Below are positions 52,631-59,786 of a stretch of 64,000 bases of DNA, piece after piece; position 1 is the first letter of the stretch, and each line of letters starts with the position of its first letter. The position numbers and the translations under genes are program-made. A model generated the notes under the pieces. That model saw only the letters and a list, made by a program, of their open reading frames with translations, did no database searches and was not told where the DNA came from. The stretch is from contig NW_003314330.1 of NCBI RefSeq assembly GCF_000143415.4, positions 960,089-1,024,088 of the forward strand. Direction: 5' to 3'. This DNA comes from Selaginella moellendorffii. Taxonomy: Eukaryota > Plantae > Lycopodiophyta.

Positions 52631-54582
52631 ATGGGGCAAGCTGGCGACGGTGAGAGAAGCTGTGATCGCCTGCTCCAATCTGGATGCTGGCGTGACGGTG
52701 TGGGATTTGGCGTCGGGCGTGCCGCTGTCGCACCTCCGATCGTGCGCGGCGCCGCGCAATGCCTTGGCGTGTGTTGGACATCATTTCCTGGCGGCATCGC
52801 AGATCCACAAGACTGCTAACAATGCCGGCGGCGCGATCTTCTTCTGGACCTGGCACAAGGTGAGTGAGAGCAGGAATCGATCGATTTCTTCTTGCCAAAA
52901 TCTCGAATTTGATCGGCCGTTTCATTCATTTTCTTTTCCTCTGCGTAGAACCAAGTGGCTTTCAAGAGCTATCCCGTGGAGCCGATCGAGCCCCTAGCTT
53001 GCACTGCCGATGGAGTTTACTTGGCGGGAGGAGGATCGTCGGGAAGAATTTATCTCTGGGAGGTGAGACTTCTCTTAACTTCGTGATTCACCCCATGACA
53101 CGGGATTCTGGCAAAGGTCTCGAGTGGAAGATTGCTGCGAGTGTGGGCCGGGCACTACAAAGCCGTCAAGTGTCTCGTCTTCTCCGACGATGATTCGCTA
53201 CTCATCTCTGGTGCCGAGGATGGACTTGTCAATGTCTATCCTCTCGTGAGGTAAGTTTGCTCCGATCGATCGAGCTTTTCTCCTTGAAGCTTTCTTCTCA
53301 TGCTTTCCGGCTTCCTTCCAGGGCCCTGGACAGCATCGAAGAAGCCGGGGAGACCCAGGTACCTTACATGCACAAATGGTCGGATCACACACTTCCAGTC
53401 ACTGGATTGCTGGCCGGCTCTGGTGGTTCTAGCGCGATCATCGTCTCGTGCTCACTAGACCACACCTGCAAGGTACGTTTCTTTAGCTCTTCGCAGCAGC
53501 GTGTTAGTTTTTCCAGCTTACCGCGAGAGTTTGTATAGATATGGAGCTTGGCTCTCGGAGCTCTACTCCGGTCGATACTCTTCCCCACTCCCATCAATGC
53601 TGTTGCACTTGATCCAGGGGAGTACGCGCTCTACGCCGGTGGAGTCGATGGCAGGATTTTTATCACGGCTCTAAACTTCGGTGTTCCATCGGGGTCTGGC
53701 TTGCATTCCGCGGATGGGCTACTCGGTGCTGACGGGATCGGCCACAGGTTGTGTGCTTTCTAAAGTTTTGTTGTTCCAATCCACCCGTCCGACTGCTTTT
53801 GACTAATCTGGAGTTGTTCTTGATAGAGCAGCCGTGCTATTACTGCTCTAGCATTTAGCATGGATGGGGTGTCGCTCGTCTCTGGCTCCGAGGACTGCAC
53901 TGTCCGGTTGTGGGACACCGTGAGCCGCCAGGTTCTTCGGACGTTTTCTCACAGCAAAGGTGACCGACCAAAGTTTCTTTTTGTCTCTCCCAACGCAAAA
54001 GTTGCTTTGCTTTGCTGGTTTCTTGCAGGTCCTGTGAGCAGCCTTTTGGTGATACCACGGCCCTCGTCCCTGCTCAGCTCTACAGATCAGCAAGGCCGTC
54101 AAATCAACCGTCGCTTACCAACGCTTCCAGTGGTTCCGTTGAGCAAGTACGTAACAGTCGAGTCAGTGGCACAAGACTTCAAGCCTTGGGAAGGCCCCCC
54201 GGTTGTCCTTCCGTTAACTTATCCTGCTGATGACGAGGATGCCGAGGGTTACTCTCACAGTATGGTCGCCATGGGAAGACAAATAAGAGAACTAGAGGTA
54301 AGAAAGGGTTTTTTGCCTGGATGAGAGACCATTGACGGGTTTTGATGACAGCAACAAGGCTCCACGGCAGCGATGCAAATGGAGCTGGAGAGATTGCGAT
54401 CGGAGCTCCGGCGGGCTCTAAACAATGGCCAGCAGTGGCAGCAATTGCACCAAGAACTTTACTGTTTCTGCGTGGACGAATTGATGGGTGGGAACCGGGA
54501 CAGGGAAGACGACGACGGAGAGAACAAGGAAAGAACCAAGGGAAGAGCCAGCAAGGTGGGGGACAAGATGCGTGACAAGTAA
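52631..54582 (+). CDS. RID3: WD40 protein RID3/WDR18/Ipi3-like, multi-exon; start codon ambiguous
   Basis: AVIACSN...TVWDL, KSYPVEPI, GRIYLWEV, HYKAVKCL, HTLPVTG, CSLDHTCK and a C-terminal coiled coil QQWQQLHQELY. Confidence 0.85.
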
Positions 54583-54601
54583 GCACAGATTTTGAGGAGG
54601 T

Positions 54602-57136
54602 TTAGGAGGTAGTGGATCGGGTGAGAGACGCTGCTCGATTAGAAGTTGTCAATTTTTGCACAGCCTATTATAACCAGACTTTGCGTTAGAGGACGAAAAA
54701 CTGAGTTGATAATATATATATACGTACTTGCATCGCAGCTAAGCGTCTTGCCACGCGCTTCTCTTCGTGCTCGCAGCAGCTGACGCGCTCATTGTCGATC
54801 ACAACATCGGCGCGTATGAAACCGTCCACCTCAGTGCACTGGATCTCGAGAGCAAGTCTTTGCTCTCTACACAAGGTCTCGAGCTGCTTGACTGGATGGA
54901 GCATCACGTTTTCCGGAGTGGCGATTGGTTCTAAGAGCCTTTCATACACCTGAAGATGAGAGAGGTTATAAGAAAGTATACTCCAATCAATACGACTTAC
55001 CTTCCAAACAATATCTGGTTCGTACTCGGAGTCGATAAAAATTGAAGCTGCCAGTGTTTGAATCACGTCTCCAAGCAGCTGAAACAGAGAATAAGCAGAC
55101 AGGATAATTGGAGAACTTGGCTTACTTTTGGTGAGTTTAGTCTGGAAATGCCGAAAGTCGAGCATGCTTTCCCCCTTGCATGCTCTTCGACAAGTGATTC
55201 TGCGAACTCGGCAATTTGAGGGACGAAGTGGACCTTCTGAAGATAAACGTGGAAGCCGTGACGAATACTAATGCAGGAGTAGTGCTCCTTGTTGATCGTT
55301 GCCTGCTTTATGGTGTTGTGGCGACCGGCCGACTGGTCCGGGAATGATCTGACCAAGTGCCGTGTCACGAGGTAGTCCAGCACTGCATCGCCGAGAAACT
55401 CTAGACGCCTGAAAGTGAAGTTGTCGTCATGAAAGCTCAGAGCAACTCGCAAGACCTGCTTGTTCCTGAACTGATAGCCGAGTTTCTCTTGTAGTTCCTT
55501 CAAATCATCATCTGTTAATGATCCGCAGCCTGTGACTTCGAATCTGTGATGATCTTCGGCCTCAGGAGGAAACCGGACTGGTATCTGGAGCCAGTTCGCT
55601 GCTGCCATAGCGGCAGCAAGTTCCCCTTCCAGCACGCATGCCCCCAGAACGGCTTCTACTACGTCCGCCAGCGTCTTCGTCGAGAGCAGTTGTTCCGGAA
55701 TCTTTGCCGCTGCTGGTATCATGCCCGGAGATATCCACTTCAGCGGCGAAAACATCTCCGCAAATACATACCGGTACAGATTCCGAGCTAGTGCCAAACT
55801 GGAAAGCGTGCTGTTGCAAACTATATTGTACAGCTCCAGGCCAAGCTCTTCACTGCCCATCGAAGGCATCGTCGCGTAGACATACGTTCCAGCGACGATC
55901 TTCAGCACGCTGTCTCCTAACAGTTCTAGTGGCTCGTAAGATACATTGAAACAGCATGCTCTGGATGTCAAAGCCTCCAACAGCTAAAACCACGTTTCAG
56001 TCCTCCAGATAACAAACTTGCTACGAATTGTACCTTCAAAGCTGAGACCGGGACGTCCATTGCATCACGCAGTTCTGCGGCTAGCAGTGCCATCTCAAGC
56101 CTGTACATAACAGAAGGAAGCCGAAGAGCGCCTCTATGCAAGCTTCCCGGTAGTAAAGTTTTCGAAAGTACGCACTCCCTTCTTGAAAAGGTGACGGCTC
56201 TTAGCTTTTTCGTTAGTGTAGCACCTGGAAAGAAGAAACTCAGATCAAATGGTGATAGATAATTAGAGTTTCATACCATTGTGTTTCGTGAGATAGCTCA
56301 GTGCCCGGTGCGCCCTCACAGCAACAACTTCGTTCGAGTGTTTCGATAGAACGACGCACGATTTTCCAGAGCAAAGGATCAAGCTGTCAATCGCGATCTT
56401 CTCGTTCGAGGCCTGTGCTTCGGAAGCGATCATCGAGTCAGCGTAATGCAAACCGGAAGAAGTTGCAGCAGCCATCAAGTTCCAATCCACGACCAGCTTA
56501 AACTCCTCTCTCCTCCATCGCCAAGTCTCTAGCAGTGGAACGGCATAGTAAAGCTTTGGACCCTCTCGGTACTCCGATAGCCTCGCGTCTTGGGAGCGGC
56601 CCAGGACGAGATCGAAAAGCCATTTGGTAAATTCTTTGATCTTCACCACCTGGAATGAAAAGAGATCCAAGTAAGAAACTTCACACAAAGAGAGAGTATA
56701 CTGTATAGTATACCTCGTCCGAGGAAACCAGCACTTCTCCAATCTCCTCTAGATGGGCACGGACTATGGAGTTTTCTTGGAGGAACAATTCCACTACCAT
56801 CGCTGCCACGGCTGGATCGACTCTGGTGGGTAGAAGGATTCCAAACTCCGTGGCGTGCCGTTGCAATGGATCCTTGCCTTCCATCACAAGCTCATAGCGT
56901 ATGGCCACGGCATGGAACAAGATCCTGTCCGACGAATGGTCGACCCTTGGACTTGCCTGGACGACACCAGGAATGCCGCGCTCGTAGTGCCGTGGCGATG
57001 CAGTGAGCGGCGATTTGCCATCGCTAGGCGGCACAAGGGGATATTTCTTCTTGCCTGAATCTGGAGCAGCATTGCAATGGGAGACTTCCCCCAATGCCGT
57101 GACAAGATCGTCGATCTTCTCCTCCATGGCCTTCAT
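54602..57136 (-). CDS. Atypical Dicer-like protein: platform, reduced PAZ, connector, RNase IIIa, RNase IIIb (E>Q), one dsRBD, no helicase; at least 7 exons, about 730 aa
   Basis: KDPLQRHATEFGILL, LPGSLHRGALRLPSVMYRLE, EPLELLGDSVL, KTLADVVEA, RLEFLGDAVLD, KLLGDVIQT, HPVKQLETLC. All GT-AG junctions splice in frame. Confidence 0.88.
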
Positions 57137-57639
57137 CGCTCGCAGGAACGCGAATTTCCAGCTCCGATCGACTCGGAGAGCGAGAGAAAACCAGAAACCT
57201 CGAACAACAGGAGAAGATCCACCGATTCACCTCAGATACCTTCGGCGCTTGCAATCGCCGCCAAGGACGAGACTTTAGAGCTTGGATCGGCTCCGAGAGG
57301 GAAGGAAAGCTGGGCCAGCAACGCGATCGACCTCAAATCTTGCAGCGAGCTCCATGGAGGGAAAAACAATGGTGAAGAACAACCTAGTGATCCAACGGCT
57401 GGGATTTGCCGCGAGGTTTCATTAAACTCATATCCAAAATTTGTTTCTGTAGAGACGATCTTTGGCTGCCACTCAAGCCTCTAGATTTAAATACTATGGG
57501 AGAGAAACAAAGCTTCCATCTCGAATCTAGAACAAAGCATCTCTGCAAATAAAAAATATTCTTAGAAAGAACTTTGGCGATGGTAATATAAGATCATAGA
57601 AAGTGAAAAATCACGTTAATTCGCCTATGGTTTGTTTGT

Positions 57640-59786
57640 TTACTCGACCACATTGCGTATGAGTAGCCTGTAAGTGCCGAAGGAGTTCTTACTTTGCCAT
57701 GCCCAGGGAATAAAAAACGCGCGGTGGAGACGAGGTGAGCTCTCATTGTCCAGGAACAAGCGTTTAGCCACGACCTGTTAGAAAAATACTCTTAGAGAAT
57801 CTGGCAAGCGTAAACAAGCACGTACAGTCCATTTGGTTTGATTGTTTCCACGATACTCTACGCCCGGTCTGTCTAAGACTAGCTCCACCACAAAGTCACA
57901 GGAAGCGTCGCTTTGGAGCTGAGACAGGGATTTCGGAAGAGTGAGAACCTTCGAAAGAAAATAAGTAACGAGATGAGATCTAACTTACAAATTGCTTTGG
58001 AGAAGCGTTGTTATGCCTGTTGAAGTAGTCCGGAGCTGCTTTCGTTCCACCCAGGCTGCTATCGAATGGAAACGGCATAAGTCCTCTAAAGCCATCGTCG
58101 AGCCATCTCACTTGGTACTTGGCTGACGGCAGAAAGAACGAGGATGGGAAACGGTGCCACTCACTGCCAATGCAAACTGCATTGAAACGCAGGAGTTAAG
58201 AGAATTGAAACTGCGAGGCTTGCCTGTGGAATTCTCGGTTGGATTAGTTGGAAGGTGTTTGTAAATCTGCATCGGTGCCGAGTAACCTTGAAGTAAAGAC
58301 GTTGTTCGACTATACGATGCCACCAGGATGAAAGATAAGAGCAAAGGCCTCAATTTCGTGAACAGACCATGCACGAAGCTCATTTTTCGTGGTACCAGAC
58401 CTGGAATCCGCTCGATGCTAGCTGCCGCAGCTACGCAAACGAGGGGATAGGTTGGATAGAGGAACCTGAAAAGAAAAAAAGCTGAGTGAACTAAGATAGA
58501 GAGCATAGTTTTGATACCTTTCTTCTTTGTGAGGTTGCAAGGACATGAATCCAAACCACAAATACAAAGGTGAGATTACCAGTAGGAGATGCTTGTCGGT
58601 ACTTCGTCGCACGAAAAGCAGCAAAACAGGTAGCCCGAACGCCAACAACAACGCAAGATTGAAATTGTTGAGCCCATTCCGAAGATAAAACAAGGGTCCC
58701 TCCACACCGTATAAAATGCTGTCGCCACCTCCCACGACATTGTAGGTGACGAGGTTGAGAATAGAAAGCTTCCACTGACCGTAAAATAATCGATCACATA
58801 GTGCTGACAGCGCCTGTATAGACAATCAAGTTGAGTTTCCAGGAGAATATCCACCAATTTATAAGAGACAAGAGGAACTTACGATGAGAACGACTGAGGA
58901 TTTAACACCGGCCATGAAAACCTTGACGGAGCTACCATTCGCCAAAGAGTACACTACCACGGGAAGAACCGCAAGGCCCGAGAATGGCCAGCCAACAAGG
59001 ACCCCCAAGGCAGCCACGGCCACGGCAGCTTCAAACTTATCGGCAAGCACAGCCGCTGATGCAAGGCTGATAGCGTACATTGAAAAGGTGCTCGGCAGAA
59101 AAGCTGAGAAAGGAGAAAAAAAACAAGAAAAGTGAGTGAGAACAGCCTGAGAATTTTTCCTTACTTGTGCTGGCTGTGTAGCAACCACTGGCAAAGCAGA
59201 GTAAAACCAAAGTGTATGATGCCATCCTTTTTCCAAACCTTTCGGACACGGCTGCCACAAGAGCTCCATCGACGGCCGCAGACACCAAGGCGAATGCCAG
59301 TTTAATCAGATAGAAAACTTTCACCTGGAAAAGGAAGATAAACACTTAAGAGCATTTCAATCAAAAGAGAAACTTTCCTACCTTTGCGAGAATGTAAGAA
59401 GCTGGAGCTCCAATAACGGCATGAATCAGGATGTAAAGATACGATCGAAGAGCAAACTCCGAGCTAGTCCAGAGAAACGAAACTCCAATTATTTTAGCGA
59501 GAGAACAGACACTCTCTAAAGCTCTCACTCACCTGTACTCCCAAGTTTGAAATCCCGATCCATAGAGAAGAAAATGCAGCGGCTCCCAGTAATTGAAAAC
59601 CTCGTCGCAGTCGTGTACGATGTTGGAGCTCGCGCTGAAGTAGCGAGTGATGAAGAGCGCGGCGAAAGCCGCAGCAAATCCGACATTCTTACTGACCTCC
59701 GGAAGATCCTTCTTCTTGGCATCCTCTTCTTCGCTGTTAATCTCTGCCGAGGAGCGATCGCGCCTCCGCTGCCGGAGCTCAGCCAT
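57640..59786 (-). CDS. ALG9: ALG9 alpha-1,2-mannosyltransferase, multi-exon
   Basis: DCDEVFNYWEPLHFLLYGSGFQTWEY, AFLPSTFSMY, GWPFSG, LYGVEGPLFY, PHKEERFLYP, CIGSEWHRFPSSF. Confidence 0.95.

What the first reader, a model, noticed from the sequence alone, without database searches (positions are those of the whole stretch)
54602..57136. Intact helicase-less, Drosha-like 'mini-Dicer' with a catalytically substituted RNase IIIb: candidate dsRNA nickase or decoy
Seen: seven exons splice in frame to about 730 aa with no stops. ALG9 ends only about 500 bp upstream, so there is no room for a DExD/H helicase. The PAZ region is much shortened and lacks the usual Y..YY pocket motif. RNase IIIa keeps all four acidic residues (ELLGD, DVVE). 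RNase IIIb reads EFLGD...GDVIQT, with codon CAA at 55058-55060 where Dicers have GDIVES. Known: this Glu corresponds to E. coli RNase III E117 and human DICER1 E1813, where substitution blocks cleavage but keeps binding, and RIIIb cuts the 5' arm. The platform and connector motifs recall plant DCL1. Inference: a DCL1-derived paralogue converged on a Drosha-like layout and may nick one strand, compete with DCL1, or serve an undescribed small-RNA pathway.
Basis: partly seen in the sequence, partly recalled or inferred. Interest (0 to 1): 0.88.

Follow-up and report, generated by a model that had tools for sequence, protein, structure and literature searches.

The report
PAZ-less minimal Dicer-like gene (mDCL)

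Summary
A seven-exon minus-strand gene (57136-54602) encodes 735 aa. RNA-seq confirms all six introns. The transcript starts between the upstream Alg9-like gene and the ATG, so there is no helicase. RNase IIIa keeps E349/D353/D436/E439. RNase IIIb reads E524/D528/D619/Q622, with codon CAA at 55060-55058.

This is not a recent DCL1 offshoot. It sits with 100/100 support in the land-plant mDCL clade (P. patens mDCL; Marchantia MpMDCL, also called "MpDCL1b"), next to Diphasiastrum, liverwort, fern, Ginkgo and probable moss orthologues.

In about 16 mDCL lineages RNase IIIa is always EDDE. The last RNase IIIb glutamate is never Glu in the 13 lineages where it can be read (Q, K, P or H), and other IIIb acidic residues are often lost too. 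The half-dead catalytic centre is therefore ancient and family-wide.

Two features are specific to this copy:
- About 70-80 aa of the PAZ core are deleted; every other member keeps them.
- The public gene model is only a 219-aa fragment, and a published DCL survey listed no homologue for S. moellendorffii, the probable source.

Most likely mechanism (inferred): a one-strand dsRNA cutter or a partner of a canonical DCL. Present-day constraint looks weak (pN/pS about 0.9, from few sites). Note s1-351398 (another piece of this genome) may describe the other allele.

The parts
54602..57136 (-). Coding span of the mDCL-type gene: 7 exons (57136-56714, 56649-56277, 56224-56034, 55983-55126, 55078-55001, 54949-54728, 54664-54602), 735 aa
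   Evidence: Spliced translation without stops. All six introns are confirmed by RNA-seq joints.
57137..57404 (-). 5' UTR / transcript start zone. RNA contig reaches 57241, one fragment ends at 57404, and depth is zero at 57322-57472.
   Evidence: depth table, pieces, loose ends. No joint leads to any upstream exon, so there are no helicase exons.
56428..56959 (-). N-terminal mDCL-specific region (residues about 60-215, interrupted by intron 1). It aligns to the platform-like region of orthologues.
   Evidence: Alignment with Diphasiastrum, liverwort and fern mDCLs. The family model aligns over its whole length to the DCL3 core.
56151..56427 (-). PAZ remnant (residues 216-290, interrupted by intron 2). 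About 70-80 aa of the PAZ core, including the aromatic/QP(L/F)L 3'-end pocket motif, are deleted.
   Evidence: No Pfam PAZ hit here. Orthologues score PAZ at or near threshold. Alignment gaps. No PAZ exon in 52-62 kb. Exon 2 is confirmed by RNA contigs.
55969..56150 (-). Dicer-type connector helix (RGALRLPSVMYRLEMALLAAELRD; residues 291-334, interrupted by intron 3)
   Evidence: Most conserved segment of the family: 64-66% pairwise identity (alignment).
55585..55968 (-). RNase IIIa domain with a complete acidic tetrad: E349 (55926-55924), D353 (55914-55912), D436 (55665-55663), E439 (55656-55654)
   Evidence: Pfam PF00636. EDDE in this and every mDCL lineage whose IIIa motifs are covered by the alignment.
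55001..55488 (-). RNase IIIb domain (residues 495-641, exon 4 end plus exon 5, interrupted by intron 4): E524, D528, D619 (55069-55067), Q622
   Evidence: Pfam PF00636 second stretch. Motif table. Gap-free alignment to Dicer RNase IIIb motifs.
55058..55060 (-). Codon CAA = Gln622, at the position of E. coli RNase III E117 and the fourth acidic residue of RNase IIIb
   Evidence: No variant listed in RNA reads or contigs.
54728..54949 (-). C-terminal dsRBD-like domain (exon 6, residues 642-715). Not recognised by Pfam.
   Evidence: Homologous region of Diphasiastrum mDCL is modelled with high confidence as alpha-beta-beta-beta-alpha. 46-49% identity across the family.
54421..54601 (-). 3' UTR (at least to 54421). 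It overlaps, antisense, the last coding exon of the convergent WD40-repeat gene (stop at about 54580).
   Evidence: Spliced RNA contig X1 record 2 starts at 54421. Neighbour's reading frame.

Best explanation
The gene is the orthologue, in a probable Selaginella moellendorffii genome, of the land-plant MINIMAL DICER-LIKE clade (P. patens mDCL; Marchantia Mp6g09830, called MpMDCL or 'MpDCL1b').

Shown: it encodes a Dicer core without helicase or DUF283. The order is a platform-like N-terminus, a PAZ remnant, the connector helix, RNase IIIa, RNase IIIb and a C-terminal dsRBD-like domain. RNase IIIa has a complete catalytic tetrad. RNase IIIb has lost the fourth acidic residue, and this loss is shared by every clade member in which the position can be read.

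Inferred: RNase IIIb serves as the structural and RNA-binding partner of the intramolecular RNase III pseudo-dimer, while only RNase IIIa cuts. The protein would then cleave one strand of a dsRNA per binding event. By analogy with human Dicer (own knowledge), that is the strand corresponding to the 3' arm. It would work beside, or on the products of, a canonical DCL rather than dicing alone. In P. patens the family member is needed for 23-nt heterochromatic siRNAs and depends on DCL3.

This copy has additionally lost the PAZ 3'-end pocket. Its cut, if any, cannot be measured from a PAZ-anchored 3' end and would have to be positioned by the dsRBD, the platform or a partner.

Confidence in identity is about 0.95. 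Confidence in the one-strand-cutter mechanism is about 0.5.
For: Identity:
- Careful ML tree puts the gene in a 100/100 clade with Diphasiastrum O6H91_06G085000, Marchantia, Riccia, Ceratopteris KP509_13G041700 and Ginkgo.
- The quick tree gives 100 SH-aLRT with four further probable-moss loci inside the clade.
- The Diphasiastrum and Ceratopteris genes carry the locus numbers that the literature lists as MpDCL1b homologues.
- MpMDCL is reported as most similar to P. patens mDCL.

Architecture:
- Pfam scans.
- AF2 family model with a confident RNase III pair and dsRBD.
- Best PDB match is Arabidopsis DCL3 7VG2 over about 800 columns, E 2e-30.

Asymmetry of the two centres:
- RNase IIIa is EDDE in about 16 lineages.
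- The RNase IIIb fourth residue is Q in 9, K in 1, P in 2 and H in 1, and never E.
- The RNase IIIb first Glu is independently lost in ferns, Calypogeia, R. sorocarpa and two metagenome loci.
- All canonical Dicers and DCLs whose motif aligned in the same table are EDDE/EDDE.

Biochemistry of the substitution: E117Q or E117A in bacterial RNase III blocks Mg-dependent cleavage but not binding (PMC6121014).

Expression and splicing.

Function in relatives: P. patens 23-nt siRNAs; Marchantia mutant.
Against: - No biochemical data exist for any mDCL in what I could read.
- The P. patens sequence itself could not be fetched, so the link between the dead RNase IIIb and the 23-nt phenotype is inference.
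- S. meliloti E125Q keeps some cleavage with Mn2+, so Gln need not be absolutely dead.
- Marchantia knock-outs change few small RNAs under standard conditions, which fits a regulator as well as a nuclease.
- In this species the gene looks weakly constrained: 17 nonsynonymous against 6 synonymous polymorphisms, pN/pS 0.89. It is the most derived family member, keeping 99 of 123 family-invariant columns.
- Expression is low and the PAZ core is gone.
Confidence: 0.55

Rival explanations
1. Non-catalytic regulator or decoy. The protein binds dsRNA, or a canonical DCL or its cofactors, without cutting. It tunes other small-RNA pathways, as proposed for MpDCL1b acting on MpDCL1a-dependent miRNAs under salt stress.
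For: - RNase IIIb is catalytically degenerate across the family.
- This copy also lacks the PAZ pocket.
- Marchantia mutants show minimal small-RNA changes in standard conditions but an altered miRNA response to salt.
- E117Q-type mutants still bind dsRNA.
Against: If catalysis were dispensable, RNase IIIa should drift as RNase IIIb has. Instead its four acidic residues are invariant in about 16 lineages spanning liverworts to Ginkgo. P. patens mDCL is required for a specific siRNA size class, which suggests processing.
Confidence: 0.2
2. A gene in early decay in this lineage. It is still transcribed and open, but no longer under effective selection after losing its PAZ core.
For: - pN/pS is 0.89. 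Omega of 0.3 or lower is rejected at p about 0.013.
- It has the largest number of changes at family-invariant positions (20 changed plus 4 gapped of 123).
- Low RNA depth.
- The PAZ deletion is unique among members.
Against: - The 735-codon frame is intact across seven exons with all splice sites used.
- The second allele differs only by substitutions and an in-frame 12-nt insertion.
- The RNase IIIa tetrad and 80% of family-invariant residues are kept.
- The polymorphism ratio is not significantly different from the two neighbouring genes: 6:6 combined; Fisher p 0.38 against the Alg9-like gene alone.
Confidence: 0.15
3. One reading: a DCL1-derived paralogue, new to science, that converged on a Drosha-like layout.
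For: [quoted passage not shown] The mDCL clade is excluded from DCL3+DCL2+DCL4 (99/99) and sits in an unresolved three-way split with DCL1, so a very deep common origin with DCL1 is possible. Earlier papers also placed mDCL near DCL1.
Against: - The clade is already described.
- It has orthologues across land plants in a species-tree-like order.
- It is not nested within the DCL1 clade, which has its own, different, short derivatives in lycophytes (P0045, P0071).
- The fold match is far better to DCL3, DCL4 and Dicer than to Drosha.
Confidence: 0.07
4. A fully competent two-strand Dicer. Gln622, or Mn2+ or a neighbouring residue, still supports RNase IIIb catalysis.
For: S. meliloti RNase III E125Q retains some cleavage with Mn2+. 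E524, D528 and D619 are kept in this copy.
Against: Several relatives have lost two to four of the RNase IIIb acidic residues (ADVP, SNAQ, SNSH), so the family evidently does not need this site. E117Q is inactive with Mg2+.
Confidence: 0.08

Closest known systems
MINIMAL DICER-LIKE (mDCL) of Physcomitrium patens (Coruh et al. 2015, as cited in PMC10721683 and PMC5144951)
   Same: Helicase-less and DUF283-less DCL with two RNase III domains. The window gene falls in the clade whose Marchantia member is reported as most similar to it.
   Different: P. patens mDCL is described as having a PAZ domain; this copy has lost the PAZ core. The moss sequence could not be retrieved, so its RNase IIIb residues were not checked. 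Its role in 23-nt siRNA accumulation is untested here.
Marchantia polymorpha Mp6g09830 (MpMDCL in PMC13738684; 'MpDCL1b' in PMC11799827) and listed homologues Dicom.06G085000 and Ceric.13G041700
   Same: Same 100/100 clade. Same domain order. Same RNase IIIa EDDE, and Q at the RNase IIIb fourth residue in Marchantia and Diphasiastrum. About 44-49% identity over the RNase III region.
   Different: Those proteins are 805-906 aa with a Pfam-detectable PAZ. This one is 735 aa without it. The published survey searched S. moellendorffii but listed no homologue there.
Arabidopsis DCL3 (PDB 7VG2/7VG3) and DCL1 (7ELD)
   Same: These are the best sequence matches among solved structures: 133 and 128 bits. 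DCL3 is also the best fold match of the family model, over platform, PAZ, connector, RNase IIIa/b and dsRBD.
   Different: Canonical DCLs have helicase, DUF283, PAZ and two complete catalytic centres. The tree excludes mDCL from the DCL3/2/4 group (99/99).
Drosha and Giardia Dicer (helicase-less class 2/3 RNase III enzymes)
   Same: No helicase; two RNase III domains forming an intramolecular dimer. Drosha also ends in a dsRBD.
   Different: Both cut both strands using two complete sites. Fold similarity is much weaker (E 1e-12 and 4e-10, against 2e-30 for DCL3). There is no phylogenetic affinity.
E. coli RNase III E117Q/A and human DICER1 RNase IIIb hotspot mutants (E1813; own knowledge for the human numbering)
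   Same: Same position of the catalytic motif (GD..E changed to GD..Q). Bacterial E117Q binds but does not cleave with Mg2+.
   Different: Those are laboratory or disease mutants. Here the substitution is the wild-type state, conserved over the age of land plants.
Short DCL1-clade derivatives of lycophytes (S. moellendorffii XP_002989272, 608 aa; Diphasiastrum O6H91_12G015000)
   Same: Also helicase-less. The Selaginella one also has Q at the RNase IIIb fourth residue (EDNE/EDDQ).
   Different: A different gene on other scaffolds. It lies in the DCL1 clade (100/98), carries canonical dsRBDs and is only about 33% identical to the window's exon 4.

Membership tests
mDCL / 'MpDCL1b' clade of land-plant Dicer-like proteins | Phylogenetic placement with the named members | tested here: met
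   100/100 clade with Diphasiastrum, Marchantia, Riccia, Ceratopteris and Ginkgo members. 100 SH-aLRT with four further loci.
mDCL / 'MpDCL1b' clade of land-plant Dicer-like proteins | No helicase and no DUF283 (Dicer dimerisation) domain | tested here: met
   No Pfam hit in exons 1-3. The transcript starts between the GT22 gene and the ATG, with no upstream joints.
mDCL / 'MpDCL1b' clade of land-plant Dicer-like proteins | PAZ domain present (the literature defines the class as PAZ plus two RNase III domains) | tested here: not met
   No PAZ hit. The core motif is deleted relative to all orthologues. No hidden exon.
mDCL / 'MpDCL1b' clade of land-plant Dicer-like proteins | Two adjacent RNase III domains | tested here: met
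   PF00636, two stretches, 1.1e-29.
mDCL / 'MpDCL1b' clade of land-plant Dicer-like proteins | Role in 23-nt heterochromatic siRNA accumulation (P. patens) or salt-responsive miRNA control (Marchantia) | not testable with these tools
   Needs mutants and small-RNA sequencing.
Canonical Dicer / DCL1-4 | DExD/H helicase, DUF283, PAZ and two complete RNase III catalytic centres | tested here: not met
   Helicase, DUF283 and PAZ are absent. RNase IIIb is EDDQ.
DCL1 clade | Nested within the DCL1 branch of the plant DCL tree | tested here: inconclusive
   mDCL and DCL1 are separate, well-supported clades in an unresolved three-way split. A sister relation is neither supported nor rejected, and no AU test was run.
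Drosha | Two active RNase III sites and closest structural and sequence affinity to Drosha | tested here: not met
   RNase IIIb lacks the fourth acidic residue. Foldseek E is 1e-12 for Drosha against 2e-30 for DCL3.
RTL (RNASE THREE-LIKE) proteins | RNase III plus dsRBD proteins without a Dicer platform or connector; grouping with RTL1-3 | tested here: inconclusive
   No RTL sequence was included in the trees. The gene does have a Dicer-type connector and N-terminal region shared with mDCLs. The best 150 of 3785 hits that I labelled were Dicer-type. The family model aligns over its full length to Dicer cores.

The most novel reading that the evidence does not exclude
mDCLs are natural 'half-site' Dicers. 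For the whole history of land plants they have kept RNase IIIa active and RNase IIIb as a dead scaffold, so they cut only one strand of a dsRNA. Such a strand-specific cut, made alongside DCL3, could be what generates the separate 23-nt siRNA class that depends on mDCL in moss. The copy in this window would be the most reduced form known: a PAZ-less nickase positioned by its dsRBD or by a partner.
Probability: 0.35. Interest if true: 0.75.

Novelty: new variant of a known kind. Interest (0 to 1): 0.5.

Why it matters
The mDCL/DCL1b class has been known since 2015 and has mutant phenotypes in moss and liverwort, but no mechanism.

The comparison made here suggests a simple, testable one. In every lineage sampled the RNase IIIa centre is intact, while the RNase IIIb centre lacks its last glutamate and is often degraded further. 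These proteins may therefore be one-strand cutters rather than true dicers. I found no mention of this in the three accessible papers on the family. The original 2015 paper could not be read, so priority is uncertain.

For this genome, the work replaces a 219-aa fragment annotation with an RNA-supported 735-aa model. It adds a lycophyte member that a published survey missed. It also shows a natural PAZ-less variant, which could tell whether end-anchoring matters for the family's function.

Tried and rejected
- Three word-index homologue searches did not return P. patens mDCL or any other Selaginella orthologue. The tool also missed known family members, so these blanks mean little.
- Coruh et al. 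2015 is not held in the library. The supplements of the Plant J paper are not held either.
A cleaner alignment worked.
- Pfam on exons 1-3 and exon 6 gave nothing useful. The dsRBD was seen only in the structure model of the Diphasiastrum orthologue. The PAZ region of that model is low-confidence, so it was not used.
- The polymorphism test cannot separate this gene from its neighbours: 17:6 against 6:6 combined; Fisher p 0.38 against the Alg9-like gene alone.
- Considered and rejected:
  - a Drosha relative;
  - an RTL-type enzyme;
  - a recent DCL1 paralogue;
  - a mis-spliced or mis-assembled PAZ;
  - a base-call error at the Q codon (and the family-wide pattern).
- I could not identify the organisms behind the Logan contig L001 or the metagenome loci. 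'Probable mosses' rests on their tree position and on my recollection of what the JGI sample series are.
Full report
**1. What is in the sequence**

On the minus strand, seven exons join in frame: 57136-56714, 56649-56277, 56224-56034, 55983-55126, 55078-55001, 54949-54728 and 54664-54602. They give 2208 nt, which is 735 codons plus TAA.

I laid two raw RNA-seq runs and two sets of RNA contigs on 54000-58500.
- Each of the six introns is supported by split reads and/or spliced contigs, in two to four of the four runs, at exactly these borders. All are GT..AG on the gene's strand.
- Reads are strand-consistent with a minus-strand RNA.
- Depth is about 1-12, against 16-29 for the upstream gene.
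- Coverage drops to zero at 57322-57472. An RNA contig reaches 57241 and one fragment ends at 57404. No joint leads further upstream.

The upstream gene is an Alg9-like GT22 mannosyltransferase (PF03901). Its stop lies about 503 nt before the ATG. So the transcript has no helicase exons.

Pfam finds two Ribonuclease_3 domains in exon 4 and nothing else.

**2. The catalytic residues**

RNase IIIa reads E349, D353, D436, E439. RNase IIIb reads E524, D528, D619, Q622, with codon CAA at 55060-55058.

Exon 5 aligns without gaps to the second RNase IIIb motif of fly Dcr-1, mouse and human Dicer and Arabidopsis DCL1. The Gln lies opposite their Glu.

No RNA variant is listed at that codon.

**3. What the gene is**

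An exhaustive HMMER search with exon 4 found one identical public protein of only 219 aa. That model starts inside RNase IIIa and reads into intron 4, so it is a truncated gene model.

The next-best hits are a small set of 600-900-aa proteins at 37-48% identity:
- Diphasiastrum complanatum O6H91_06G085000
- Riccia fluitans
- Ceratopteris richardii KP509_13G041700
- Ginkgo Gb_37867
- unnamed Logan proteins

Further members came from Marchantia polymorpha and M. paleacea, Calypogeia and Riccia sorocarpa.

A careful ML tree of the RNase III region puts the window gene in a 100/100 clade with these. The clade is:
- separate from a DCL1 clade (100/98);
- excluded from DCL3+DCL2+DCL4 (99/99).

The three groups form an unresolved split at the base of plant DCLs.

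The literature already knows this clade:
- P. patens MINIMAL DICER-LIKE lacks helicase and DUF283 and is needed for 23-nt heterochromatic siRNAs.
- Marchantia Mp6g09830 is named MpMDCL or MpDCL1b.
- The listed homologues include Dicom.06G085000 and Ceric.13G041700, the same loci as in my clade.

That survey searched S. moellendorffii but lists no homologue for it. An earlier paper mentions only a truncated, RNase III-only S. moellendorffii sequence next to mDCL.

The source genome is probably S. moellendorffii. The grounds are:
- the identical 219-aa public fragment (P0001);
- the nearest relative being a lycophyte;
- the very short introns;
- other scan notes on this genome mentioning MTPSL genes and 'probable lycophyte'.

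**4. The substitution is family-wide**

I tabulated the eight catalytic positions in all retrieved sequences. I then extended the table with:
- a Logan genomic contig, L001;
- full-length alignments;
- plant contigs recovered from metagenomes.

The metagenome contigs form a 99% subclade inside the mDCL clade. They are probably mosses.

Results:
- RNase IIIa is EDDE in every lineage whose IIIa motifs are covered. One incomplete contig, L031, aligns poorly there.
- The RNase IIIb fourth residue is never Glu.

| Residue at RNase IIIb position 4 | Lineages |
|---|---|
| Q | window, Diphasiastrum, L001, Marchantia, Calypogeia, R. fluitans, L025, L032, L053 |
| K | R. sorocarpa |
| P | two ferns |
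| H | L062 |

- The first RNase IIIb Glu is also lost in ferns (A or S), Calypogeia and a related fragment (V), R. sorocarpa (G), and L053 and L062 (S).
- L053 and L062 have lost all four residues (SNAQ, SNSH).
- Every canonical Dicer or DCL whose motif aligned in the same table is EDDE/EDDE.
- RNase IIIb as a whole remains about as conserved as RNase IIIa: 45% against 48% mean pairwise identity.

This is the pattern of a domain kept for structure and binding but not for catalysis, next to a domain kept for catalysis.

**5. What is special about this copy**

Compared with all other members, about 70-80 residues of the PAZ core are missing. The missing stretch includes the aromatic/QP(L/F)L segment.
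- Orthologues score PAZ in Pfam at or near threshold, and the metagenome loci keep the motif.
- tblastn with the Diphasiastrum protein finds no PAZ-like exon anywhere in 52-62 kb.
- Exon 2 is confirmed by independent RNA contigs.

The copy is the most derived member: 99 of 123 columns invariant in the other six are kept, 20 are changed and 4 are gapped.

Among the variants seen in RNA, 17 are nonsynonymous and 6 synonymous.
- pN/pS is 0.89. Omega of 0.3 or lower is rejected at p = 0.013.
- The two neighbouring genes give 6:6, and the difference is not significant.
- The alternative allele carries an in-frame 12-nt insertion in the C-terminal tail and no frame-breaking change.

**6. Structure**

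An AlphaFold2 model of the Diphasiastrum orthologue, built with the family alignment, has a mean pLDDT of 64. The RNase III pair is confident, the C-terminal alpha-beta3-alpha dsRBD is confident, and the PAZ is poorly defined.

The model matches solved structures over its whole length:

| Structure | Foldseek E-value |
|---|---|
| Arabidopsis DCL3 core (7VG2) | 2e-30 |
| DCL4 | 4e-27 |
| Mammalian Dicer, dicing state | 3e-25 |
| Drosha | 1e-12 |
| Giardia Dicer | 4e-10 |

By sequence, DCL3 (133 bits) and DCL1 (128 bits) are the nearest solved chains.

**7. Mechanism**

Shown:
- a Dicer core without helicase, DUF283 or PAZ pocket;
- one complete and one incomplete catalytic centre;
- transcription and correct splicing.

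From established knowledge:
- Each RNase III domain of the intramolecular dimer cuts one strand.
- The fourth acidic residue (E. coli E117) is required for Mg-dependent cleavage but not for binding (PMC6121014).
- In human Dicer, RNase IIIb cuts the 5' arm (own knowledge).

Inferred:
- The protein cuts at most one strand per binding event, and acts with or after a canonical DCL.
- The strict conservation of RNase IIIa against the drift of RNase IIIb argues that catalysis by RNase IIIa is what selection maintains. This favours a one-strand nuclease over a pure decoy.
- The link to 23-nt siRNAs in moss is attractive but untested, because I could not obtain the moss sequence.
- In this lineage, PAZ loss, low expression and weak apparent constraint leave room for a changed role or for early decay.

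**8. Verdict**

The finding is real and well observed, but the gene belongs to a known family and the 'substitution' is that family's ancestral state.

What is new here:
- the RNA-supported full-length model of a member that is missing from, or truncated in, public annotation and surveys;
- its unique loss of the PAZ core;
- the clade-wide catalytic asymmetry, which none of the three accessible papers on the family mentions, and which gives a direct biochemical hypothesis for the family.

Noticed in passing
window 54421-54664: The mDCL transcript's 3' UTR (a spliced RNA contig reaches 54421) overlaps, antisense, the last coding exon and 3' end of the convergent WD40-repeat gene (stop at about 54580). 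Reads of both orientations are present there. This is a natural antisense pair at the end of a Dicer-like gene.
   Followed up: partly
window 55063-55722: The only public protein identical to this locus (P0001, 219 aa) starts at Met417 inside RNase IIIa and runs into intron 4. The public gene model is therefore a fragment of the 735-aa gene.
   Followed up: yes
not in the window: proteins P0045 (S. moellendorffii XP_002989272, 608 aa) and P0071 (Diphasiastrum, 510/609 aa): A second, different helicase-less DCL in lycophytes. It belongs to the DCL1 clade and carries canonical dsRBDs. The Selaginella copy has substitutions in both centres (EDNE / EDDQ). Scan note s1-351398 may refer to this gene, or to the other allele of the window's gene.
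   Followed up: partly
window 58177-58223: The Alg9-like GT22 gene has a GC..AG intron (read as CT..GC on the plus strand), supported by about 19 reads in each raw run and by contigs.
   Followed up: no
window 54619 and 56223-56277: Allelic variation within the gene. There is an in-frame 12-nt insertion allele behind 54619 in the C-terminal tail (one contig, six reads). There is also a variant at the exon 2/3 junction that changes the split codon 266. Many heterozygous SNPs occur across the region.
   Followed up: partly
window 57275-57355: If transcripts start upstream of 57355 (one fragment ends at 57404), the 5' UTR holds a 26-codon upstream ORF beginning at ATG 57355-57353.
   Followed up: no
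loci L053/L054 and L062/L063 (metagenome contigs): mDCL-type genes, probably from mosses, with an intact PAZ and RNase IIIa but all four RNase IIIb acidic residues replaced (SNAQ, SNSH). These are the extreme of the family's catalytic asymmetry.
   Followed up: partly
(protein searches): After the mDCL clade itself, full-length liverwort and Diphasiastrum mDCLs score best against DCL2 and DCL3 proteins of seed plants rather than DCL1. The RNase III tree nevertheless excludes mDCL from the DCL3/2/4 group. The N-terminal/PAZ half may therefore carry a different signal.
   Followed up: no
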